DNA from: Ranitomeya imitator
Lineage: Eukaryota
Length of the DNA: 64,000 nucleotides
NCBI RefSeq assembly: GCF_032444005.1
Contig: NC_091283.1
Location: 420,422,001 to 420,486,000, forward strand
Reading direction: 5' to 3'
Of the stretch, positions 841-60,154 are shown one piece after another (position 1 is the first letter of the stretch; each line of letters starts with the position of its first letter). The position numbers were made by a program, and so were the translations under genes. The notes below the pieces were generated by a model that worked only from the letters and a program-made list of their open reading frames with translations, made no database searches and had not been told where the DNA came from.

Positions 841-3800
841 ATGGTGTCTCTACATTCTCTCAGCGTATTGTCACTGAATGTAAGGCAAATTAAGTCTGTG
901 CCTAGGAGAGTGGCAATATTGGACTATCTGAGCAATCTGAATGCGGATGTGTATTGCATTCAGGAATGTGGGATTTCTGATCCCTTAAGTGACAACGTTT
1001 GGCCTTTGGGTCAGAGTGTGTGGTCTGGGTCGGTAGGTAATAAAAATTCTGGGGTGGGAGTTTTGGTGAATGGTAGAGGGGTTAAGGTGGAGAGTTACAC
1101 CGTGGTGGAAGCAGGAAGGTGTGTAATATGTGAGCTCAATTGTAAGGGTTGGAGGGTGAGGGTGGTTAACATGTATGCACCGGTAGATAAGGGGGAGAGG
1201 CTGGAGATTTTTGAGAAACTGAGTTATTTTTTATCTGGGAAAATGCCAGTAATTTTTGTTGGAGATTTTAATTGTGTGACGGAGGGGGATAAGATGGATA
1301 TTACAGGTAAAAGACTCAAGAGTCTTGTATCAGATTTTTCTTTTCAGGATGCTGCGGAGGTTATCCTTGGTAAGCCTCCTCCTGCGACCTATAAGGCTGA
1401 CAGGGGTGGTATAGAGTCTAGAATAGACCGTATTTTTTTCTCTCCAAATATTGTTTGTTGGGATTTCCAGCAGGAAGATGTCCCTTTTTCTGATCATGTG
1501 TATTTGAGAGCACGGTTGGAAGGTAAGTGTGATTTTGTGTATGGTGGAGGTGTGTGGAAGCTTAATGTGCGTTTGTTGGAAGATAAAAGAATTATGCGTG
1601 ACTTTAAAAGGATGTATGTAAGATGGAGGAGTAAAAAAAGTGATTTCGTGAATGTGCTTGAGTGGTGGGATTGGTTGAAGTGTGAGATTGGTATTTTCTT
1701 TAAAAAGTGGGGTAGGCGGAATGCTGCTATGAATAGGGCAAAATTTAATGAGTTAAGTGTCAGATTGGAGTGGTTACGAAAGTTGAGGATAATTGGAGTG
1801 GATGTGGATGATTTGATGTGTCAGGTGAAAGATGAAATTAAGAAATTTATTGAAGTAAAAGGTAAAGAAATAATTTTTCGTTCTAAAATTGAACATTTGG
1901 AAAAAAATGAGAAATGTACAAGGTTTTTTTTCAAAAAAGTGCTTGGTAAGAAAATGGATATGCATGAGGTGGTGAATGGTGAAGGTGTGTGTGTAAGTGG
2001 TAAAGATGTGATGGATGAGGTTGTGCTGTTCTATAAGGAGTTGTATGGGGAAAAATGGTTTGATGATCAGATGCTGAAGGATGTGTTGGGGTGTTTAAAT
2101 GGCCGATTGGGAGAGGATGAGTGTGGAATATTGGATGATGAAATTGTTTTGGATGAAGTTAAAAAAGTGGTTATGTCTGCTAGTAAGAATAAAACTCCGG
2201 GAAAAGATGGTTTGCCTGTGGAATTGTATGTGAAAGAATGGGATACGATTGGGGTCGACTTAGTGGAAGTGTGTCAGTATATGTTTAGGGAGAATGTGTT
2301 GAGTGATTCAATGAGAGAAGGAGTGGTGGTTCTGGTCTATAAGAAAGGTGATAGGAAGGATCTGGGCAATTGGAGGCCTATCACGCTTTTAAACGGTGAT
2401 TACAAGGTTTTTAGTAAGTTGTTGGCTAATCGAATGAGGGAAGTGGTTGGTGGTGTGGTGGATGAAGATCAAGTGTGTTCGGTGCCGGGGAGAAGTATGA
2501 CTGAGAATTTGGTTTTGCTGCGTGATGTGATTGGAGATTGTATGAGTCGTAAACAGAAATGTCTGGTTTTGTCAGTTGATTTTGAGAAAGCCTTTGACCG
2601 TGTGTCGCATAGTTTTATGTTTCATGTGTTGGCTAAGATGGGCTATTCGAGGAATTTTGTGAGCTGTGTTAGGAGTTTGTATAGTAATGTGACGAGTGAA
2701 TTTTTGGTGAATGGGTGTTTGAGTGATAAAGTGAGAATTAAGTCTGGAGTACGTCAGGGGTGCCCTATGTCCCCTATTTTGTTTATTAGCGTGATTGAGG
2801 TGTTGATGTGTATGGTTAGGAAGGATAAGGTTATGAGAGGTGTGTTGATTCCTGGGAGTGGTGGGAGGGATGTTAGGATTTTGGGTTATATGGATGATGT
2901 GGTGATAGTGAATGAGAGTATGGCTGCAATGAGTAGGGCAAGGTTGATATTAAGTCTGTTTTGTAGTGTGTCAGCCTTTAAGGTTAATTGGGCTAAGAGT
3001 TCTTTTAAATGTTTTGGTGATAGGAATGTTAGGATGGATGGTGTGAAATGTGAGGATGGTCCAATGAAGGTGCTTGGGATTAAGTTCAATGATGACTTGA
3101 AGGGAAATGAAAGTTGGGATGAGTGTGGGGAGAGAGTGGTGCGTAAATTGAATTTTTGGAGGTTAAGAGAATTGACTTTAACTGGGAAGGTCTTGATTAT
3201 TAAGGCGGTTATTTTTCCTATTTTGTTATTTGTTGGGAATGTGTATCCTACTGCGTTTGTGAAAATGAGGAAAACTGAGAAATTGATTTTTAATTTTCTC
3301 TGGGGAAGTCGCATGGAGAAATTGAAGCGGGAGTCTGTGTATAAGTTATGTGTGAATGGTGGCTTGAATTTTTTGAGTGTTGAGTTCTTTTTGGGGATTA
3401 GTTATGTGAAAATGTTTGTAGTATGTTTTGGGAAAGGTAATAAGTGTGCTTATATGATGAAGTATTCAGCCGGATGGATGTTGTATGGTTTGAAGTGGGT
3501 GAAAAGGGATGCAAGTGTGCCAGTTGCTTTTAAGTGTCCGATGTGGTATGCTTGTGTCGAGAAATTTGTTAGAAAGTATGATTTGTTGTCTGTTAGTATG
3601 AATGATTTTAGACAAAAAGGGAAAGTTGTTAGGATGGTGCGTGAGCGTGAGATTGCATGTGATATTAATGGATTGAGAGGTGAAGAGGTGCCAGAGATGT
3701 GGAAGAAATTAAGTATACAAGGTGTGACGAATAGACAGAGAGATATTGTTTGGATGATGTGGCATGATATTTTGCCTGTTAGGGATGTGCAAAAGAGGAG

Positions 3801-4221
3801 GGATTTAATTAAATCCGAGGTGTGTCCGAGGGATGGATGTGGTGCGAGAGAGCATGTTAGACATCTGGTTTGGGACTGTGATTTTGCGTATGCTGTATGG
3901 AAAGGTATAGGTGGTCTTTGTAAGGAATTGGCTGGTGTATCGTATCTTAATTGGAAGCTTGCTATGTTTGGAATGGGTGCATGTAGTAGGGTGAAGGATA
4001 GGATTTTATGGCTGTTGGTTGTATGTGTAATTGAAAGTATATGGGATGCGAGGAATTTGTTAGTTTTTAAAAGGAAGAAGATGTCTGTTAATGAATGTTT
4101 GAGTTTGATTCTGTCACGTATGTATGTGATTTACCTGTGGGACCAGAAACGAGGAAGTTTTATTGATGCTGAAGGGGTCTGGAAATTCAAGAAGTGGAGG
4201 TTTCTTGTGAAATTTAATTAG
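841..4221 (+). CDS. E1 ORF2: APE endonuclease, reverse transcriptase, C-terminal CCHC (1126 aa, intact)
   Basis: SLNVR, IQEC, GDFN, SRID, FSDH; WRPITLLN, DFEKAFD, QGCPMSP, YMDD; CPRDGC..H..WDC. Confidence 0.97.
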   Translation: MVSLHSLSVLSLNVRQIKSVPRRVAILDYLSNLNADVYCIQECGISDPLSDNVWPLGQSVWSGSVGNKNSGVGVLVNGRGVKVESYTVVEAGRCVICELNCKGWRVRVVNMYAPVDKGERLEIFEKLSYFLSGKMPVIFVGDFNCVTEGDKMDITGKRLKSLVSDFSFQDAAEVILGKPPPATYKADRGGIESRIDRIFFSPNIVCWDFQQEDVPFSDHVYLRARLEGKCDFVYGGGVWKLNVRLLEDKRIMRDFKRMYVRWRSKKSDFVNVLEWWDWLKCEIGIFFKKWGRRNAAMNRAKFNELSVRLEWLRKLRIIGVDVDDLMCQVKDEIKKFIEVKGKEIIFRSKIEHLEKNEKCTRFFFKKVLGKKMDMHEVVNGEGVCVSGKDVMDEVVLFYKELYGEKWFDDQMLKDVLGCLNGRLGEDECGILDDEIVLDEVKKVVMSASKNKTPGKDGLPVELYVKEWDTIGVDLVEVCQYMFRENVLSDSMREGVVVLVYKKGDRKDLGNWRPITLLNGDYKVFSKLLANRMREVVGGVVDEDQVCSVPGRSMTENLVLLRDVIGDCMSRKQKCLVLSVDFEKAFDRVSHSFMFHVLAKMGYSRNFVSCVRSLYSNVTSEFLVNGCLSDKVRIKSGVRQGCPMSPILFISVIEVLMCMVRKDKVMRGVLIPGSGGRDVRILGYMDDVVIVNESMAAMSRARLILSLFCSVSAFKVNWAKSSFKCFGDRNVRMDGVKCEDGPMKVLGIKFNDDLKGNESWDECGERVVRKLNFWRLRELTLTGKVLIIKAVIFPILLFVGNVYPTAFVKMRKTEKLIFNFLWGSRMEKLKRESVYKLCVNGGLNFLSVEFFLGISYVKMFVVCFGKGNKCAYMMKYSAGWMLYGLKWVKRDASVPVAFKCPMWYACVEKFVRKYDLLSVSMNDFRQKGKVVRMVREREIACDINGLRGEEVPEMWKKLSIQGVTNRQRDIVWMMWHDILPVRDVQKRRDLIKSEVCPRDGCGAREHVRHLVWDCDFAYAVWKGIGGLCKELAGVSYLNWKLAMFGMGACSRVKDRILWLLVVCVIESIWDARNLLVFKRKKMSVNECLSLILSRMYVIYLWDQKRGSFIDAEGVWKFKKWRFLVKFN

Positions 4222-4259: not shown

Positions 4260-4346
4260 TACCATGCATGATGAAGGCTGAGTATCATTTGAAGCTTTTT
4301 TAAGCGGATTTGATCGAGCATTGTGCTCTGCCTATCTGATTTGGTA
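4260..4346 (+). other. Putative box C/D kink-turn hairpin in E1 3' UTR
   Basis: ATGATGA 4268-4274, CTGA 4336-4339, outer stem TACCA/TGGTA, inner stem AGGC-GAG/CTC-GCCT. Confidence 0.55.
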
Positions 4347-4522: not shown

Positions 4523-4537
4523 GTTTCCAAAAACAGA
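4523..4537 (+). terminator. snRNA 3' box (repeated 14 nt after every U2 3' fragment: 10885, 17453, 24387, 31117, 37846, 44601, 51671, 60168)
   Basis: GTTTCCAAAAACAGA or GTTTCTAAAAACAGA matches GTTTN0-3AAARNNAGA. Confidence 0.9.
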
Positions 4538-24003: not shown

Positions 24004-24222
24004 ACGCTACCATAAATGTAAATTATTGGCCGATGCTTGTATATTACTTGTTTTTACTGCATGTAACTTTGGAATGAAAAAAAAAAAAAAAAAATCTGAT
24101 TGATATGTTATAAATGCTTTAAATATGTAATACACTGTATACATACGTCTTTTATCTGTAATTGCTTTTAAAACTTTAATAAACGGGTGTACCTAAATGT
24201 GGGTACTTCCAAGTTAAAAAAA

Positions 24223-24373
24223 ATCTGTTCTTATCAGTTTAATATCTGATACGTCCCCTATTTGGGGACCATATATTAAATGGATTTTTAGAACAGGGAG
24301 CTGGAAATGGAGCTTGCTCTGTCCACTCCACGCATTGACCCGATATTGCAGTATCTTCGGGAACAGTGCACCC
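24223..24373 (+). ncRNA. RNU2: U2 snRNA 3' fragment (nt 38-188)
   Basis: Variant B sequence. Confidence 0.97.
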
Positions 24374-27398: not shown

Positions 27399-30300
27399 AT
27401 GGTATTCACTATTGTCTCACAAAATGTGAGGGTGTTTAAAAATAGGTGTAGAAGGGCTGCAATTTTTGATTTTTTAGCTCTGAAAAATGCATCGATTTTT
27501 TTGTTTGCAAGAGTGTGGGGTGGTGGATGGTGTGAAAGGGGATGAGTGGCCTTATGGGGCATCAGTATGGTCTGGGAGTGCATGTAATAAGAATGATGGT
27601 GTGGGAATTTTGGTAAAGGGGCGGGAAGTTGTTTTGAATGATTATGTGGTTATTGAGGTGGGTAGGTGCATATTAGCAAATTTTGTGTATAGAAATGTGA
27701 AATTTTGCATTATTAATGTTTATGCGCCGGTGGATAAGAATGAGCGGAAAGATTTGTTTGAAAAAATTAAATTTTTTGTGCCGGGGAGAATGCCTGTGGT
27801 GATTGTGGGTGATATGAATTGTGATGTGGGGAAAGTGAATGTGGATGTGTCTGGTAAGGTTTTATTAGATTTGGTTAGTGATTTTGGGTTGAGAGACATG
27901 CAGCGTTTGTGTAAAGTGAGTCCGTTGTTGAATACTTTTTTTTCTGAGAGTGGAAAAATACAATCTAGGTTGGATTATTGTTTTATTTAAAAAAATATGG
28001 TTTCCATTAGTTATAAGCAGGAGAATGTTTTGTTTTCAGATCATGTGTGTGTGTCGTGTGAGGTGGATATAAATGTAAATGGTGTGTTTGGTAGGGGTTT
28101 ATGGAAATTAAATTGTAAGTTGCTGGAGAATGTGGAGGTGAGGAAGGTGTATGTAAGATGTTATAAAGAGTGGTGTGAGGGTAAGAGTGGTTTTGGGAAT
28201 GTGTGTGAGTGGTGGGATTGGGTTAAAAAACGGACAAAAATTTTCTTTAAAGATGTAGGATATAAGGTTGCTGCAATTAAGAGAGAAAAATTTGTGAGCT
28301 TAAATGCGCATCTAAATTTATTGTATATTTTGAGGGAAGGAGGAGTGGTGGTGGAGGAGGAGATTTTGGTGGTAAAGAAGGAAATTCATGAATTTTTGAT
28401 GGAGAGGGGAAGGAGTATTGTGTTTAGGTCTAAGGTTGATAGGTTGGAGCATGATGAGAAATGCTCACGGTTTTTTTTCAAGAAGGTCTTTGGGGAGAAA
28501 CAAAGTATGAATGTGCTGTGTGGGGCTGATGGGAGAGAAGTATGTGGGGAGGATATGTGTGAGGAGGTAGCAAAGTTTTATGAGGATTTGTATGCGGTGA
28601 AGTGGAGGGATGGAAATTTGGAAGATGAAGTGTTGTGTGTGTTAGAGAATAAGTTGAGTGAGGTAGATAAAGGGAGTGTGATGAGTGAAGTGACAGATGA
28701 TGAGGTTTGGAAGGTAATGAATAGTATGGCGTTAAATAAAACGCCGGGGGAAGATGGTCTGCCTGTAGAGTTTTATCGAGTGATGTGGGAGGTGATTGGT
28801 AAGGATTTTGTGGAGGTTTGTAAATATATGTGGGCAAATATGGAAGTGGCTGAGAGTATGCGTGCGGGTATGGTGGTGTTAATACCAAAGAAAGGTGATT
28901 TGAGAAATATTAAGAATTGGAGACCGATAACATTATTAAATTGCGATTATAAAATCTATGCAAAGGTAATGGCAAATAGAATGCGTGATGTGATAGGGAG
29001 TGTGATTGGGGATGAACAATGTTGTGCGGTGCCTGGAAGGCGTATACATGAGTGTGTGTGTATGTTGCGGGATTGTTTGTGGGATTGCAAGAGTCGCAAG
29101 AGAGGTGTGTTTTTGTTAAGTCTGGATTTTGAAAAAGCGTATGATAGGTTGTCGCATAGTTTTTTGTTTAGAGTGTTGTTAAAAATGGGTTTTCCGGCTG
29201 AGTTTGTTGGGAGAGTGAGAAGTCTATATAAGAATATTTATAGTTGTATTTTGATGAATGGTTATGTTGGGAGGAGAGTGAATGTTTTTTCGGGTGTGCG
29301 TCAGGGGTGTCCTATGTCTCCTGTGGCTTTTATTTGTGCTATTGAACCATTGCTTTGTATGTTAAGAAAGGATAAGGTGATTCGGGGCGTACAAGTGCCG
29401 GGTGGAGGGGGTAGGGAATGGAAGGTTAGTGGTTATATGGATGACGTGTGTGTATTATGTGATTCAGAATGTTCAGTGGGACGGGTAAAGTTATTAGTGT
29501 CTATTTTTTGTGGTGCGTCTGCTTTTAAAGTTAATTGGGAGAAAAGTGAATGTAAGAGTTTTGGGGGAGGATCTTTGAGTAAGTATGTTGGTGTGAATGA
29601 AGTAAAGGGGCCTATTAAGGTGTTAGGTGTTAAGTTTTCTGAGAGACTGGATGGGAAGGAAAGTTGGGATGATGCGAAAGAGAAAGTTGAGAGGAAGTTG
29701 TGTTTTTGGAGGTTGAGAAGCCTTACTTTTTTTGGGAAAATTTTGATTATAAAGAGTATAGTGTTGCCTATTTTTTTGTATATTGCGCTGGTTTTTCCGC
29801 CAGGGTATATGTGTTTGAGAGGGTTAAATAGGGTACTGTTTGTTTTTTTATGGAATTCTAGAATGGAGAGGGCAAAGAGAGAAACTTTGGTAAAGCGTTT
29901 GGAAAAGGGTGGTTTGAATTTTCCTAACCTTGAAGTTTTTTTTGGTGTAAATAGTGTGTTGTATGTTTTGAGGATGATTAGGGCAGATGGAAAAAATTCA
30001 TGTATGTGTAGGTATTTGTTTGGGGCTTATTTGTTTCGTTTAAGGTGGTGGGAGAGAGATTTGCGGTGTCTGGTGGCGTTTGAAGTGCCTGTATGGTATG
30101 TGTGGGTTTATAAATTTTTGATGAAGTATGAGTTGTGTGATGTGGATATTCGGTTGTTGAGTAATAAGAAGGCTGTGTATAGGATGATTGAGTGTAGAGA
30201 GACAGATTGTGATATCAATATGGTTAGAGGGTTGGATGTACAGAAAGTGTGGAAGAAGGTACGAATGGATGGTATGACAAATAGACAGAGTGAGATTGTG

Positions 30301-30771
30301 TGGCAGTCATTGCATGGAGTATTACCTGTGAGAGAATTTCAAAGGAACCGTGGTTTGGTGAGAAGGGAGATATGTCCGAGAGAGGGTTGTGGTGGAAGTG
30401 AGAGTGTGATACATGTTTTTTGGAATTGTAAGTATGCTAGGAATGTGATTGCAAGAATGGGGCCTTTATGTAAAGAATTGGGTGGTGTGAGTTTGTTATC
30501 TTTTGAGGTGTTTATGTTTGGTTTGGGAATGTGTGATGGTGAGAAAGGAAGAGTGTTGTGGTTGATGCTTGCATGTATAAAGGAAGTGTTGTGGGATGTA
30601 AGGAATGTGTATGTTTTCAAGAGGAAAGCTATTTTAGTTAAGGATTGTGTAAGGGTGATTTTGGGGAAATTGTATGTTTGTTATTTGTGGGAGGTGAAGA
30701 GGAGAGGGGAGTTTGATGCAGAGGCCATTTGGAAGGTAAAGAAATGGAGATATTTTGTGAATACTTCTTGA
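27399..30771 (+). pseudogene. E5 ORF2: +1 frameshift at T-run 27496-27502 and in-frame TAA at 27988-27990
   Basis: Comparison with E6; RT part 27997..30771 is open. Confidence 0.9.
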
Positions 30772-30814: not shown

Positions 30815-30930
30815 TTATTTCCGATGATGATGGGAACGGCTTTTTGTGTTTTAATTTTGGCACAGCCGTTTGGGTATGTTTCTTTGGTTATAGTTTTCTA
30901 GACCGTGAAATTCCCCATCTGAGGGAATAA
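30815..30930 (+). other. Putative box C/D kink-turn hairpin in E5 3' UTR
   Basis: TTATTTCC-G-ATGATGA (30824-30830) ... CTGA (30919-30922)-GGGAATAA. Confidence 0.65.
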
Positions 30931-37543: not shown

Positions 37544-37659
37544 TTATTTCCGATGATGATGGGAACGGCTTTTTGTGTTTTAATTTTGGCACAGCCGTTT
37601 GGGTATGTTTCTTTGGTTATAGTTTTCTAGACCGTGAAATTCCCCATCTGAGGGAATAA
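37544..37659 (+). other. Putative box C/D kink-turn hairpin in E6 3' UTR
   Basis: Box C 37553-37559, box D 37648-37651, 8-bp outer stem. Confidence 0.65.
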
Positions 37660-40868: not shown

Positions 40869-43800
40869 ATGGGGTTTATAATTATATCACAAAATGTGAG
40901 GGTCTTTAAAAATAGGTTGCGGCGGGCGGCTATTTTGGATTTTTTTGCAACACAAAATGCAGGAATTTTTTGTTTGCAGGAGTGTGGGATTGTGGATGAT
41001 GTGAAGGGGAGTGAATGGCCTCATGGTGCGTCTGTGTGGTCAGGGAGTGCTTGTAATAAAAATGATGGTGTGGGTTTTTTAGTGAAGGGAAATGATGTGA
41101 GTTTGTGTGACTATATGGTGATTGAGGTTGGAAGGTGTGTGTTGGCTAATTTTGAGTTTAGAAATGTTCGTTTTTGTGTTATCAATGTATATGCGCCTGT
41201 GGAAAAACAGGAGCGTAAGGGTTTGTTTGAAAAAATTAAATTTTTTGTTCCTGGGAGAGTGCCTGTAGTGATAGTGGGTGATATGAACTGTGATGTGGGA
41301 AGTGTGAATGTGGATGTGGCAGGGAAAGTGTTAATGGATATGGTGAGTGATTTTGGTTTAAGGGATATGCAGTGTGCATGCAAGATAGCACCGTTGTTAA
41401 ATACGTTTTTTTCTGATAGTGGGAGGGTGGCGTCTAGGTTAGATTATTGTTTTGTGTCTAAAAATCTGATTCCTGTTAGTTATGCACAGGAGAGTGTGGT
41501 TTTTTCGGATCATGTGTGTATGAAGTGTGAATTGGATTTGCATGTTAATGAGGTGGCTGGGAAAGGTGTGTGGAAGCTGAATGTGAGTTTGCTGGAAGGA
41601 GGGGGTGTGAGAGAGGAGTATAAAAGAATTTATGCAGATTGGTGTGGATGCAGGAGTGATTTCAGAAGCGTGTGTGAATGGTGGGATTGGGTTAAATGGA
41701 AAACCAAGAGTTTTTTTTTAAAAACTCGGGTACAAGTGTGCGGCTGCAAAGAGGAAAAGGTTTGTTTTTTTAAATGCAAGATTGAGCGTGTTGTATAAGT
41801 TGAGGGCCGGAGGGATGGATGTGAGTGAAGATTTAGTGAAAGTGAAAAAAGAAGTGGATGATTTTTTGTTAGAAAGAGGGAGGAGTATTGTGTATAGGGC
41901 CAAGATAGAGAATTTGGAGAAGAATGAGAAGTGTTCGCGTTTTTTCTTTAAAAAAGTTTTTGGGAAAAGACAGAGTATGAGTGTTTTGAATGGGATGGAT
42001 GGAAATGAAGTGAGTGGTGTGGACTTGTGTGAGGAAGTGGCAAAGTTTTATGATGACTTGTATGCTGTGAAATGGAGGGATGAAGGTTTGGAGAGTGAGG
42101 TGCTGAGTGGTTTGGAAAATAGTTTGAATAAGATAGAAAGGGAAAGTTTGATGGGTGATGTGACAGATGAAGAAGTATGGAAGGTGGTGTGTAGTATGGC
42201 GTTGAATAAAACACCCGGGGGAGGATGGTTTACCGGTGGAATTTTATCGTGTGATGTGGGATGTGATTGGGAAGGATTTTGTGGATGTATGTAAGTATAT
42301 GTGGGCGAATGCAGAGGTGGCAAATGGTATGCGTGCAGGGGTGGTTGTGTTATTGCCAAAAAAGGGTGATTTGAAAAATCTTAAAAACTGGAGGCCGATC
42401 ACATTGTTGAATTGTGATTATAAGATTTATGCGAAGCTTTTGGCCAACAGGATGCGTGGTGTGGTTGGGAGTGTGGTGGGTGAGGAGCAATGTTGTGCGG
42501 TGCCTGGAAGACGAATACATGGAAGTTTGTGTATGTTGAGAGATTGTTTATGGGACTGCATGAGTCGTAAGAAGGGGGTGTATGTGTTGAGTTTGGATTT
42601 TGAGAAGGCGTATGATAGGTTAGCGCATGGTTTTTTGTTTAGTGTGTTGGTGAGGATGGGATTTCCTTCTGAGTTTGTTGAGAGAGTGAGAAGTTTGTAT
42701 AAGAATATTTATAGTTGTGTGTTGTTGAATGGAAATGGGGGGAGGAGAGTAAATGTGTTTTCGGGTGTTCGGCAGGGGTGCCCTTTGTCCCCTATCGTAT
42801 TTATTTGTGCAATTGAGCCATTGTTATGTCTGTTGAGAAAAGATAAGGTGATTCAGGGTGTGCAAGTACCGGGGGGTGGGGGGAGAGAGTGGAAGATGAG
42901 TGGTTATATGGATGATGTGTGTGTGTTGTGTGATTCAGAGTGTTCGGTACGGCGTGTGAAGTTGTTGGTTTCTATTTTTTGTGGAGCTTCTGCTTTTAAA
43001 GTGAATTGGGAGAAGAGTGAGTGTAAGAATTTTGGGGGGAGGAGTCTGAGCGATGATGTTGGAGTGAATGTGGTGAGTGGACCGATAAAGGTTTTGGGCA
43101 TGAAATTTTCGGAGAAACTGGATGGAGAGGAAAGCTGGGTGGATGTGAGAGAGAGAGTGGAGCGTAAGTTAAATTTTTGGAATTTGAGGGATCTTACGTT
43201 TTTTGGTAAAATTTTAGTTATTAAGAGTGTTGTGTTACCTATTTTTTTGTATGTTGCGATGGTTTTTCCACCAAGCTACATGTGTGTTAGAAGATTAAAT
43301 AGGGTTTTGTTTGTCTTTTTTTGGGGTTCATGTATGGAGCGTGCTAGGAGAGAAATTGTTATGAAGAGTTTGGATAAGGGGGGACTGGGTTTCCCAAATT
43401 TGAATGTATTTTTTGGCGTGAATATTATGGTGTTTGTATTAGGTGTGATTAGGATGGATGGGAAGTATGCATGTATGTGCAGGTTTTTGTTTGGAAATTT
43501 CTTGTTTCATTTGAAATGGCGTGAAAGAGATCTTAGGAGCCCAGTGGCTTTTGAGGTTCCTGTGTGGTATGTGTGGGTTTACAAATTTTTAGTGAAGTAT
43601 GAACTTTGTGATGTGGATGTGAGATTGTTAGAAAAGAAGAAAGCTGTATATAAGATGATTGAGTGTAGAGAGATGGAATGTGACATTGGACGAGTTTACA
43701 GGCTGTCCTTACCAGATCTTAAAGTGGTAAGAGGGGATGATGTGCAGAAAGTATGGAAGAAGGTACGTATGAATGGTATGACAAACAGGCAGAGTGAGAT

Positions 43801-44272
43801 TGTATGGCAGTCATTGCATGGGGTGTTACCGGTGAGGGAGTTTCAGAAAAATCGGGGTTTAGTGAGGAGTGAGAAGTGTCCGAGGAGTGGATGTGGTGGA
43901 AGTGAGAGCGTGGTGCATTTGTTTTGGAATTGTCAGTACGCTAGAAGTGTGATTGCAGGGTTGGGTCGTTTGTGTAAGGAGCTGTGTGAGGTGAATCTGT
44001 TGTCTTTTGAGCTTTTTATGTTTGGATTGGGTATGTGTGGGGAAAAGGAGAGAGTATTGTGGTTAATGATGGCATGTATAAAAGAGGTTTTGTGGGATGT
44101 GAGGAATATATATGTGTTTAAAAGGAAGGATATTGAAGTTAAAAATTGTATAAGGATTATTTTGGGAAAATTGTATTTTTGTTTTGTGTGTGATCAGAGG
44201 AGGAGAGGGGAGGTGGATGCAGAGGGAATTTGGAAAACCAAAAAATGGAAACATTTTGTTAATGTATCTTGA
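40869..44272 (+). pseudogene. E7 ORF2 with two homopolymer frameshifts (~41711-41724 and 42217-42221)
   Basis: Three overlapping track ORFs give a continuous APE-RT-CCHC protein. Confidence 0.88.
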
Positions 44273-44310: not shown

Positions 44311-44424
44311 TTTTCCAGTGATGATGGGAATGGCGGTTACATTGTGTATGTGGCTTGCTGTTTTGGGAGATGAGTTCCATAAAGTTGTAGAGTCTTGACT
44401 GTGGAACTTCCCATCTGAGGGAAA
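44311..44424 (+). other. Putative box C/D kink-turn hairpin in E7 3' UTR
   Basis: TTTTCC-A-GTGATGA (44318-44324)-TGGGAA ... TTCCCA-T-CTGA (44415-44418)-GGGAAA. Confidence 0.7.
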
Positions 44425-44436
44425 AAAAAAAAAAAA

Positions 44437-44587
44437 ATCTGTTCTTATCAGTTTAATATCTGATACGTCCCCTATTTGGGGACCATATATTAAATGGATT
44501 TTTAGAACAGGGAGCTGGAAATGGAGCTTGCTCTGTCCACTCCACGCATTGACCCGATATTGCAGTATCTTCGGGAACAGTGCACCC
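44437..44587 (+). ncRNA. RNU2: U2 snRNA 3' fragment (nt 38-188)
   Basis: Variant B sequence. Confidence 0.97.
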
Positions 44588-45598
44588 CTTCTCTGATCCG
44601 GTTTCTAAAAACAGATTGAATTGAATTGAAATCAGCACAGCAAGTTGTCATTTAACCCTTTCGGAGAATTCTTTTCAGGGTCAAAGAAGCACGTTTCAGA
44701 TGGCAAATGTAGCAATTTGCTCAATTTCACTGGACCGTTTGCAACATTTCCTGTGCCTTGCTTTCACCTGTGCATGTTCAGCATTGGATTGCATCCAATA
44801 TGCAATCAAGCAATCAAGCAATCTTTGCTGGTTGCAACAGGTGTGTTTAGATGTAGGCCCGAATGAGGCCTTTGTAACAGTGTTGCTAATATATTGTGCC
44901 ATCTACAAAATTAGGCCCCTGCTGTCTGTCTGTCTGTCAGTATGAAGTGTTTAAATTGAAGTATCCTACGAGTAGTTCGGCCATACATACTACATTTGTG
45001 ACCGCATGCACAAATTCCTTTGTAAAACATTGGCTCCCTCTTGTGGACCACAGACTTTTAATTATGTGGTGTATGATATGTATTTAAATAAAGAAGGAAA
45101 AATGGGGTGGGTCTGTGATGATCTTGCTTGAATGTGCTAGTCTTGTCCATCTTGTCTTGCACTGTGTGAGTAGTATTCTAATGCTTTTGACCAATTAGGT
45201 GCGCTGCTGCTGCCTGCAGTAGATAGAATCTGTGCACGGAACCTTCACCAGCTGTCACAATGGGGCCTTCAGCCATTGACTCCGGAACTCTCACGTGTCA
45301 CAATGGGCTCTGGACCTATCTAAGGCAGAGAAAAATGGCGCCGTCTTCAGTCTGCTGCTGGAGCAGCAGCAGACCACATGGTAGGGGGATTGTCTGTCTG
45401 TGCCCAGCTTCAGGGCAGCTGGCAAGACAACTGCTAGCCCGTCTGGTGTTTGAATTACACACTCGCTCTGCCCGTTTCTTGAATAGCCCTCTTTACCTTG
45501 ACAAGTCAGCTGGTATGTCACTCTCCATCCATCAGGAGGAACGTTACCCCTTAGACCCCAGTCCAGTGCCTCTCACTTAGCCAAATCAGTTCTCTTGC

Positions 45599-59790: not shown

Positions 59791-60003
59791 ACGCTACCAT
59801 AAATGTAAATTATTGGCCGATGCTTGTATATTACTTGTTTTTACTGCATGTAACATTGGAAGAAAAAAAAAAAAAAATCTGATTGATAAGTTATAAATGC
59901 TTTAAATATGTAATACACTGTATACATACGTCTTTTATCTGTAATTGCTTTTAAAACTTTAATAAACGGGTGTACCTAAATGTGGGTACTTCCAAGTTAA
60001 AAA

Positions 60004-60154
60004 ATCTGTTCTTATCAGTTTAATATCTGATACGTCCCCTATTTGGGGACCATATATTAAATGGATTTTTAGAACAGGGAGCTGGAAATGGAGCTTGCTC
60101 TGTCCACTCCACGCATTGACCCGATATTGCAGTATCTTCGGGAACAGTGCACCC
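60004..60154 (+). ncRNA. RNU2: U2 snRNA 3' fragment (nt 38-188)
   Basis: Variant B sequence. Confidence 0.97.

What the first reader, a model, noticed from the sequence alone, without database searches (positions are those of the whole stretch)
44311..44424. Box C/D kink-turn hairpin caps the 3' end of three retrotransposon families
Seen: E7 has TTTTCC-A-GTGATGA-TGGGAA ... TTCCCA-T-CTGA-GGGAAA. This is outer stem, one spacer base, RUGAUGA, CUGA directly abutting the stem, plus an extended inner stem. E5/E6 (30815-30930, 37544-37659) have TTATTTCC-G-ATGATGA ... CTGA-GGGAATAA. The divergent E1 (4260-4346) has the same boxes with different stem sequences (TACCA/TGGTA; AGGC-GAG/CTC-GCCT). In each case it ends at the A-tail. 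Known: this is the C/D K-turn geometry bound by 15.5K/SNU13, which routes RNAs through Cajal bodies and nucleoli; U2 gene arrays associate with Cajal bodies. Inference: these elements may use a snoRNA-like localisation or stability signal to bring their RNP to the U2 locus. I know of no description of this for a LINE 3' UTR.
Basis: partly seen in the sequence, partly recalled or inferred. Interest (0 to 1): 0.9.

Follow-up and report, generated by a model that had tools for sequence, protein, structure and literature searches.

The report
C/D-box kink-turn hairpin ending U2-specific retrotransposons

Summary
The window is a U2 snRNA array in which all nine U2 genes carry a full-length APE+RT (Keno/Tx1-like) element at the same site. 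E1, E5=E6 and E7 end, directly before the A-tail, in a hairpin built as stem I, one spacer base, RUGAUGA, stem II ... stem II', U, CUGA, stem I'. A descriptor scan of 328 kb (window plus 23 fetched loci, both strands) hits only these four and one new case. The new case, L018, is a contig from another data set whose ORF2 fragment is 45% identical to E1. Shuffled UTRs reach a weaker criterion in 5e-5 to 2e-4 of trials. The box nucleotides are invariant, while the stem sequences differ completely between E1, L018 and E5/E7.

All carriers belong to one ORF2 clade. Four other families in the same array, fish-like Keno and Xenopus relatives lack the hairpin, and most of them have AATAAA 20-45 nt before the tail. 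So the hairpin is not needed for U2 targeting. Its terminal 40 nt also lies next to non-U2 flanks in related genomes. It has no C'/D' boxes, no guide to U2, no Cajal-body wobble stem and no Rfam match.

Best reading (inferred): a SNU13-type K-turn that caps or marks the RNA 3' end and sets where reverse transcription starts. I found no literature precedent.

The parts
44311..44424 (+). E7 3'-terminal hairpin. Stem I is 44311-16 with 44419-24. The spacer is 44317. Box C GTGATGA is 44318-24. Stem II is 44325-30 with 44408-13, and U 44414 pairs with A7. Box D CTGA is 44415-18.
   Evidence: Stem I has 6 pairs and stem II 8 pairs counting G6-C1 and A7-U. MFE z = -3.6.
44422..44437 (+). A-run of E7. 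Its first three A form part of stem I. U2 nt 39 onward starts at 44438.
30815..30930 (+). E5 hairpin. Box C ATGATGA is 30824-30. Box D CTGA is 30919-22. Stem I is TTATTTCC/GGGAATAA (8 pairs).
37544..37659 (+). E6 hairpin, a 99% identical copy of E5 (same insertion duplicated in the array). Box C is 37553-59 and box D is 37648-51.
4260..4346 (+). E1 hairpin. Box C ATGATGA is 4268-74. Box D CTGA is 4336-39. Stem I is TACCA(TG)/(TT)TGGTA. Stem II is AGGC-T-GAG/CTC-T-GCCT with a 1-nt bulge.
841..4221 (+). E1 ORF2 (1126 aa, uninterrupted; APE + RT + zf-RVT), ending in TAG.
27997..30771 (+). E5 ORF2 part (924 aa; RT + zf-RVT, no APE in this frame), ending in TGA.
42236..44272 (+). E7 ORF2 C-terminal part (678 aa; RT + zf-RVT; ORF2 is split into several frames), ending in TGA.
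44438..44615 (+). U2 snRNA nt 39 to its 3' end downstream of E7, plus the snRNA 3' box GTTTCTAAAAACAGA at 44601-15. The same arrangement follows all nine elements.

Best explanation
The hairpin is a conserved 3'-terminal RNA module of one clade of U2-specific Keno/Tx1-like LINEs, and its core is a box C/D-type kink-turn.

Shown:
- Its position directly before the A-run.
- Invariant box nucleotides.
- Covarying stems across four lineages whose ORF2 C-termini are at most 46% identical.

Inferred:
- The K-turn is bound by the host L7Ae-family protein SNU13/15.5K, possibly with NOP58/NOP56. This forms a snoRNP-like cap on the element RNA.
- The cap protects or defines the RNA 3' end. It takes the place of the AAUAAA-based 3' end used by sister lineages.
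- It also fixes the point, at the adjoining A-run/U2 junction, where ORF2p starts target-primed reverse transcription.

It is not a methylation guide, and it is not what selects the U2 site.
For: - Anatomy and chance.
- Conservation: RUGAUGA and CUGA are invariant in E1, E5/6, E7 and L018, including the C/D-specific 3b:3n U:U and 4b:4n G:C. Stem I and stem II have unrelated sequences in E1, L018 and E5/E7. RNAalifold finds 5 of 8 stem I pairs compensatory.
- Divergence: ORF2 C-termini are 44-46% identical between these lineages, and the lineages share one clade.
- Host partner: boxes that stay invariant while everything else changes point to a slowly evolving partner. C/D K-turns need L7Ae-family proteins in order to fold (PMC5689011).
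- Precedent for capping: snoRNP assembly blocks exonucleases and caps long RNAs, as in sno-lncRNAs and SPAs (PMC10557570).
- Poly(A) signals: no AATAAA/ATTAAA lies in the last 200 nt of E1. In E7 and L018 the only AATAAA lies upstream of the hairpin (147 and about 125 nt from the tail). By contrast E3, E4/9, E8, all ten fish-like Keno loci and the three Xenopus relatives have AATAAA within about 45 nt of the tail.
- Transcript context: every interrupted U2 keeps an snRNA 3' box, so read-through U2-element-U2 transcripts that do not depend on polyadenylation are plausible.
Against: - No protein binding, RNA 3' end or small-RNA data: no listed run is on record as RNA, and only contigs could be laid.
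- Stem II is a long continuous helix (8-10 bp), unlike canonical snoRNAs, so full NOP56/NOP58/fibrillarin assembly is uncertain.
- E1 and L018 have a non-Watson-Crick pair at -1b:-1n (G.U, G.G), and L018 has A.C after G6-C1.
- E5/E6 create an AATAAA at the stem I/A-run boundary, and E2 lacks both a poly(A) signal and the hairpin, so the poly(A)-signal contrast is imperfect.
- There are only four lineages.
Confidence: 0.45

Rival explanations
1. The hairpin is the recognition site for the element's own ORF2 protein, as in stringent-type LINEs. The K-turn is only a structural module inside it, and no host snoRNP protein is involved.
For: - Stringent-type LINEs are recognised by their ORF2p through a 3'-terminal stem-loop placed directly before the tail (PMC4176376, PMC1636434).
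- The position and the covarying stems fit that pattern.
- The last 40 nt is far more abundant than the rest of the hairpin and lies at non-U2 sites, as expected for a 3' tail shared by partner elements.
- Sister lineages have other terminal hairpins (E4).
Against: - A self-encoded partner could co-evolve with its RNA. Yet all 11 box nucleotides, including the C/D-specific U:U and G:C positions, are unchanged between lineages with 45% identical ORF2 C-termini, while all other UTR sequence has changed.
- This rival is not exclusive of the main explanation.
Confidence: 0.3
2. The hairpin is a captured or hitchhiking box C/D snoRNA-like gene. It is processed out of element or U2 read-through transcripts into a small stable RNA and has no role in retrotransposition.
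For: - The full C/D terminal motif, which is what snoRNA processing and stability need, is present (PMC10557570).
- In L018, and less clearly in E5, an A-rich stretch precedes the hairpin, and in L018 and E7 an AATAAA does. This looks like an older 3' end onto which the module was appended.
- snoRNAs are known to be retroposed (PMC1687206).
Against: - No Rfam snoRNA family matches (best E = 0.44-8, far below gathering scores).
- There is no internal CUGA and no consensus C' box.
- The bases upstream of box D are paired in stem II, and complementarity to U2 is no better than in shuffles.
- Retention at the extreme 3' end through deep divergence of the elements argues for a role in the element's own cycle.
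Confidence: 0.1
3. One reading: the C/D motif routes the element RNP through Cajal bodies to the U2 gene array and so contributes to target choice.
For: - C/D motifs do direct nucleolar and Cajal-body trafficking (established knowledge; PMC10557570).
- All carriers seen with a flank in this window sit in U2.
Against: - Four families in the same array and ten fish-like Keno loci use the identical site without the hairpin.
- The conserved tail abuts at least three non-U2 flanks in related genomes.
- The Cajal-body element of C/D scaRNAs, a G.U/U.G wobble stem, is absent: the longest stacked wobble run is 2 and there is no (UG)n run of 3 or more (PMC4041459).
Confidence: 0.08
4. A chance resemblance, or a SECIS-type K-turn for UGA recoding.
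For: - The boxes are short.
- AUGA...GA is also the SECIS core.
- E5 and E7 ORF2 end in TGA.
Against: - Chance is 5e-5 to 2e-4 per UTR for a weaker match, yet the motif is found in four lineages at the same position.
- E1 ORF2 is uninterrupted and ends in TAG.
- No SECIS model matches at E up to 10.
Confidence: 0.03

Closest known systems
Terminal box C/D motif of snoRNAs/scaRNAs (SNU13/15.5K K-turn)
   Same: RUGAUGA and CUGA are brought together by a terminal stem. The bulge is the 3-nt N-R-U, followed by tandem G.A pairs, 3b:3n U:U and 4b:4n G:C (PMC5689011).
   Different: - It sits at the 3' end of a roughly 5 kb protein-coding LINE RNA rather than in an intron.
- It has no C'/D' boxes, no antisense guide and no Rfam family.
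- Stem II is a long helix that leads into one or two further hairpins.
3'-tail stem-loops of stringent-type LINEs (UnaL2, ZfL2, R2, SART1)
   Same: A conserved hairpin directly before the tail at the site where reverse transcription starts. It is lineage-specific, and its structure is conserved more than its sequence (PMC4176376, PMC1636434).
   Different: Those hairpins are not K-turns and carry no host snoRNP consensus. Here the invariant part is exactly the host C/D consensus.
sno-lncRNAs and SPA lncRNAs (long RNAs capped by snoRNPs)
   Same: A snoRNP module at the end of a long RNA protects that end from exonucleases and replaces a cap or a poly(A) tail (PMC10557570, PMC12084880).
   Different: Those are host intron-derived non-coding RNAs. 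In this case the RNA would be a retrotransposon template, and capping is only inferred.
H/ACA domain at the 3' end of vertebrate telomerase RNA
   Same: An RNA template for a reverse transcriptase that took on a host snoRNP domain at its 3' end for 3' end formation, stability and Cajal-body trafficking (established knowledge; cited in PMC10557570).
   Different: That domain is H/ACA rather than C/D, belongs to a host gene rather than a mobile element, and has been shown experimentally.
Keno (Tx1-clade U2-specific LINE; PMC4640811)
   Same: APE + RT element inserted at one fixed U2 site with the 3' flank TCTGTTCTTATC.
   Different: The fish-like Keno loci retrieved here end in AATAAA-N-TTTTCGAAAGAAAAAA without any C/D hairpin. 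Their ORF2 is only 32-35% identical.

Membership tests
box C/D snoRNA / scaRNA | Box C RUGAUGA near the 5' end and box D CUGA near the 3' end | tested here: met
   GTGATGA or ATGATGA, and CTGA, in E1, E5, E6, E7 and L018.
box C/D snoRNA / scaRNA | A terminal stem that places the boxes in K-turn geometry (3-nt bulge, tandem G.A, U:U, G:C) | tested here: met
   E5 and E7 fit fully. E1 and L018 have one non-Watson-Crick pair at -1b:-1n. MFE folds close the stem.
box C/D snoRNA / scaRNA | Internal C'/D' boxes | tested here: not met
   No internal CUGA in any hairpin. There are only single 1-mismatch UGAUGA-like hexamers, in E7 and L018.
box C/D snoRNA / scaRNA | An antisense element of at least 10 nt upstream of D/D' against an rRNA or snRNA | tested here: not met
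   Against U2, the best runs are matched by 25-96% of shuffles. The bases upstream of box D are paired in stem II. rRNA of this organism was not available.
box C/D snoRNA / scaRNA | Match to a curated snoRNA family | tested here: not met
   Rfam 15 in E-value mode: the best snoRNA hits are 12.7-17.4 bits, against gathering scores of 39-88.
box C/D snoRNA / scaRNA | Accumulates as a 60-300 nt RNA bound by SNU13, NOP56, NOP58 and fibrillarin | not testable with these tools
   No run is on record as RNA, and only contigs could be laid.
box C/D scaRNA (Cajal-body type) | A G.U/U.G wobble stem made of GU/UG repeats in the apical hairpin (PMC4041459) | tested here: not met
   The longest stacked wobble run is 1-2, and there is no (UG)n run of 3 or more.
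Keno / Tx1-clade U2-specific LINE | ORF2 with APE endonuclease, RT and a C-terminal zinc-binding domain | tested here: met
   Pfam Exo_endo_phos, RVT_1 and zf-RVT in E1.
Keno / Tx1-clade U2-specific LINE | Insertion at one fixed U2 position, in the sense orientation, with an A-rich tail | tested here: met
   Nine of nine junctions are ...A(n)|TCTGTTCTTATC. The site is the same in L007-L009 and L011-L017.
   No Repbase sequences are held. Fish-like U2 insertions are a distant sister group.
Stringent-type LINE 3' tail | A conserved stem-loop directly before the tail | tested here: met
Stringent-type LINE 3' tail | Tail shared with non-autonomous partner elements or recognised by the element's own ORF2p | tested here: inconclusive
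   The last 40 nt reaches a summed depth of about 10,000, against 108-260 for the rest of the hairpin, and abuts non-U2 flanks. The contigs are too short to show what carries it.
SECIS element | An in-frame UGA to recode, plus a SECIS fold | tested here: not met
   E1 ORF2 is uninterrupted and ends in TAG. No SECIS model matches.

The most novel reading that the evidence does not exclude
A lineage of site-specific LINEs has taken over the host box C/D snoRNP core motif as its 3'-terminal module. SNU13, with or without NOP58/NOP56, would then cap the retrotransposon RNA. That cap would replace poly(A)-signal-dependent 3' end formation and mark the start site for reverse transcription. This would be a mobile-element counterpart of the H/ACA domain of vertebrate telomerase RNA and of snoRNP-capped lncRNAs.
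Probability: 0.35. Interest if true: 0.8.

Novelty: new variant of a known kind. Interest (0 to 1): 0.6.

Why it matters
How LINE RNAs that live inside snRNA or rRNA genes obtain a defined 3' end, and how their reverse transcriptase finds it, is known for only a few elements (R2, SART1, UnaL2).

This case offers a short motif that can be mutated and whose host binding protein is known. The question 'does a retrotransposon use a host snoRNP protein in cis?' therefore becomes directly testable by gel shift, RIP and retrotransposition assays.

The array also supplies natural controls. Sister families at the identical target site end in AAUAAA instead of the hairpin.

If confirmed, it would extend snoRNP end-capping from host lncRNAs and telomerase RNA to mobile elements.

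Tried and rejected
- **Guide-RNA idea.** Complementarity of the hairpins to U2, including the 12-nt G.U-tolerant match of E5/E7 to U2 nt 40-51 next to the insertion site, is matched by 25-30% of shuffles and is not conserved in E1 or L018.
- **Known snoRNA or SECIS origin.** No Rfam match.
- **Cajal-body wobble stem.** Absent.
- **Wider family census.**
  - The metagenome scan for A-tailed insertions at the U2 site gave 7 loci, all fish-like and without the hairpin.
  - A viral-contig scan for the tail gave nothing.
  - Protein searches gave only distant relatives.
  - Of 12 contig look-ups, one gave a new hairpin (L018).
  - Three Xenopus laevis loci and L023 have none.
  - L001-5 and L021 are cut before the relevant region.
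  - L022 is ambiguous: ATGATGC...CTGA with 8/9 stem II pairs, a weak stem I, and the contig ends.
  - The closest relative, P0095 (86% identical over a short stretch), had no DNA available.
- **Covariance model.** MAFFT misaligned L018's 3' arm, so no covariance model was built. An explicit descriptor and pair table were used instead.
- **Expression.** No run is on record as RNA, and contigs cannot show RNA ends.
- **Variants in related organisms.** E7-like copies vary at the R position of box C (G>A, still RUGAUGA) and in the interior, not in the other box positions or the stems. With 7 sites this is not significant.

Full report
**Context.** Rfam finds nine U2 snRNA genes on the + strand. 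Each one is interrupted at the same position...GTAGTA|TCTGTTCTTATC. The inserts are 5.0-5.5 kb elements whose ORF2 carries an APE endonuclease, a reverse transcriptase and the zf-RVT domain. This is the organisation and target of Keno, the Tx1-clade U2-specific LINE (PMC4640811). Every unit keeps an snRNA 3' box, GTTTC(C/T)AAAAACAGA, about 11 nt after the U2 3' end.

By ORF2 C-terminus the nine elements fall into two groups:
- E1 with E5=E6 and E7. E1 is 44-46% identical to E5/E7, and E5 is 73% identical to E7.
- E2, E3, E4=E9 and E8, which are at most 38% identical to the first group.

E5/E6 and E4/E9 share their 5' junctions. They are therefore array duplicates, not separate insertions.

**The observation.** A register-fixed pair table gives the following.
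- Stem I, read outward from the turn:
  - E7: CCUUUU/GGGAAA.
  - E5: CCUUUAUU/GGGAAUAA.
  - E1: G.U, U.U, then ACCAU/UGGUA.
  - L018: G.G, then ACCAAGU/UGGUUUG.
- One spacer base follows, then RUGAUGA.
- Stem II begins with G6-C1 and A7-U (A.C in L018). It continues as:
  - E7: UGGGAA/UUCCCA.
  - E5: the same with one bulged C.
  - E1: AGGC-U-GAG/CUC-U-GCCU with one bulged A.
  - L018: UUUGAGGA/UCCUCAAA.
- CUGA directly abuts stem I.

With the spacer plus R-U as the 3-nt bulge, this is the standard K-turn. Its tandem G.A pairs are followed by 3b:3n U:U and 4b:4n G:C, which is the box C/D class (PMC5689011). Independent MFE folds put both boxes in an internal loop closed by the terminal stem. 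RNAalifold on E7, E5 and E1 recovers the same architecture, with 5 of 8 stem I pairs compensatory.

**Chance.**
- The strict descriptor finds only E5, E6 and E7 in both strands of the window. Dinucleotide shuffles give 0.01-0.03 hits.
- Shuffling each UTR 200,000 times gives both boxes with stems of at least 5/7 pairs each in 11 (E1) to 41 (E7) trials. The observed values are 6-7/7.
Each hit lies directly before an A-run.

**A fourth lineage.** A full-library HMMER search with the E5 ORF2 C-terminus yielded the fragment P0077. It is 45% identical to E1 and scores 134 bits against this clade versus 90 against the other. Its contig, L018, comes from a different sequencing run. L018 ends in AACCAG-G-AUGAUGA-UUUGAGGAA ... 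UUCCUCAAA-C-CUGA-GUGGUUUG-UUU-A8. The boxes are unchanged, and both stems are different again.

In a tree of C-terminal regions, E1, P0077 and E5/E7 lie in one clade (SH-aLRT 83). That clade also holds a subclade whose UTRs are cut (L001, L021), ambiguous (L022) or lack the hairpin (L023). Three Xenopus laevis relatives are sister to the clade and end in AATAAA plus A-tail with no hairpin.

**What it is not.**
- No Rfam family, snoRNA or SECIS, comes near its threshold.
- There is no internal CUGA and no consensus C' box.
- The bases upstream of box D are paired, and complementarity to U2 does not exceed shuffles. It is therefore not a methylation guide.
- The Cajal-body element of vertebrate C/D scaRNAs, a G.U/U.G wobble stem (PMC4041459), is absent.
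- E1's ORF2 is uninterrupted and ends in TAG, which rules out a SECIS role.

The hairpin cannot be what selects U2.
- E2, E3, E4/E9 and E8 in the same array use the identical site without it.
- So do ten fish-like Keno loci from marine and other metagenomes: L007-9 and L011-17.
- When the E7 hairpin was laid on contigs of the host and related organisms, the last 40 nt (the 3' arm of stem II, box D, stem I and the tail) had a summed depth near 10,000. The rest had 108-260.
- Some of those contigs continued into at least three non-U2 flanks, one of them seen in two organisms.

Part of the depth asymmetry may be technical, because the A-run lengthens the alignable part. The non-U2 flanks are direct observations. 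The contigs are too short to show whether those copies carry the whole hairpin.

**Mechanism.** Two facts guide the choice.

First, all 11 box nucleotides are invariant across lineages whose proteins are about 45% identical, while the rest of the UTR is unalignable. A self-encoded partner could co-evolve with its RNA. A host partner as conserved as SNU13 could not. C/D K-turns fold only when an L7Ae-family protein binds (PMC5689011).

Second, the carriers lack a usefully placed poly(A) signal.
- E1 has none within 200 nt.
- E7 and L018 have their only AATAAA upstream of the hairpin.
- E5/E6 form one only at the stem I/A-run boundary.
- Nearly all non-carriers have AATAAA 20-45 nt before the tail. 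E2 is the exception.

snoRNP assembly is known to block exonucleases and to cap long RNAs (PMC10557570, PMC12084880). The retained U2 3' boxes make read-through, non-polyadenylated U2-element-U2 transcripts plausible.

I therefore favour a SNU13-type cap that stabilises or defines the 3' end and positions ORF2p at the adjoining A-run/U2 junction (confidence 0.45). The main rival is a purely self-recognised 3' tail as in stringent-type LINEs (PMC4176376, PMC1636434; 0.3). The two are compatible with each other. The origin could be a captured snoRNA appended behind an older AATAAA/A-rich end, as the sequence upstream of the hairpin hints most clearly in L018 (AATAAA followed by an A-run) and in part in E7 (AATAAA) and E5 (an A-rich stretch). 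There is no direct evidence for this.

**Novelty.** Searches of the held literature found no LINE 3' UTR described as a C/D K-turn. The searches used Keno/U2, snoRNA/retrotransposon/K-turn, and kink-turn/retrotransposon/RT/UTR. The known snRNA/snoRNA-LINE chimeras join the small RNA to the 5' side of truncated L1. I rate this a new variant of a known kind: a LINE 3'-terminal recognition hairpin built on a host snoRNP motif. Interest is moderate to high. It is limited by the small number of lineages and the absence of any RNA or protein data.

Noticed in passing
window 1-64000; 3' boxes at 4523, 10885, 17453, 24387, 31117, 37846, 44601, 51671, 60168: All nine U2 genes of the array are interrupted by full-length 5.0-5.5 kb elements of seven families, yet each keeps its U2 3' half and an snRNA 3' box. 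E5/E6 and E4/E9 share identical 5' junctions, so the array spreads insertions by unit duplication.
   Followed up: partly
window 44396-44437 (contigs of runs X5, X7, X13, X17): The last 40 nt of the hairpin plus tail is about 40-100 times deeper than the rest of the hairpin in DNA contigs of the host and relatives. It abuts non-U2 flanks, for example A(n)|CATCATCTCTGAAAATAGGGTCCCACAGC in two organisms. This could be a partner SINE, other site-specific families or extreme 5' truncation.
   Followed up: partly
window about 24077-24223 and about 59870-60004 (E4/E9 3' ends): The E4/E9 3' region has an internal A18 run followed by TCTGATTGATA... and about 125 nt more, ending in a second A-tail (AAGTTAAAAAAAA). 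The same end motif is seen in E8. It looks like a short second insertion at the same site, or a 3' extension.
   Followed up: no
L007-L009, L011-L015, L017 (3' ends): Fish-like Keno insertions from metagenomes share a conserved terminal motif, CAATAAA-N(1-2)-TTTTT(C)-RAAAGAAAAAA, right at the U2 junction. This is a different conserved 3' tail for the same target.
   Followed up: no
L022:1340-1412: A relative's UTR has ATGATGC ... CTGA with 8 of 9 stem II pairs. Box C position 7 has changed A to C, and its partner U to G. Stem I is weak, and the contig ends 20 nt later without a tail. It may be a degenerate or internal version of the motif.
   Followed up: partly
window 44322-44333 and 30828-30839 versus U2 nt 40-51: UGAUGGGAA(U/C)GG of E7/E5 can pair, with four to five G.U pairs, with CUGUUCUUAUCA immediately downstream of the insertion point. 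This is not above shuffles and is not conserved in E1 or L018.
   Followed up: yes
window about 24180-24210 and L023:1135-1160: The E4/E9 tail and the L023 tail share CGGGTGTACC followed by CCAAG, although their ORF2s sit in different clades. It is either chance (about 0.04) or exchange of 3' tail modules between lineages.
   Followed up: no
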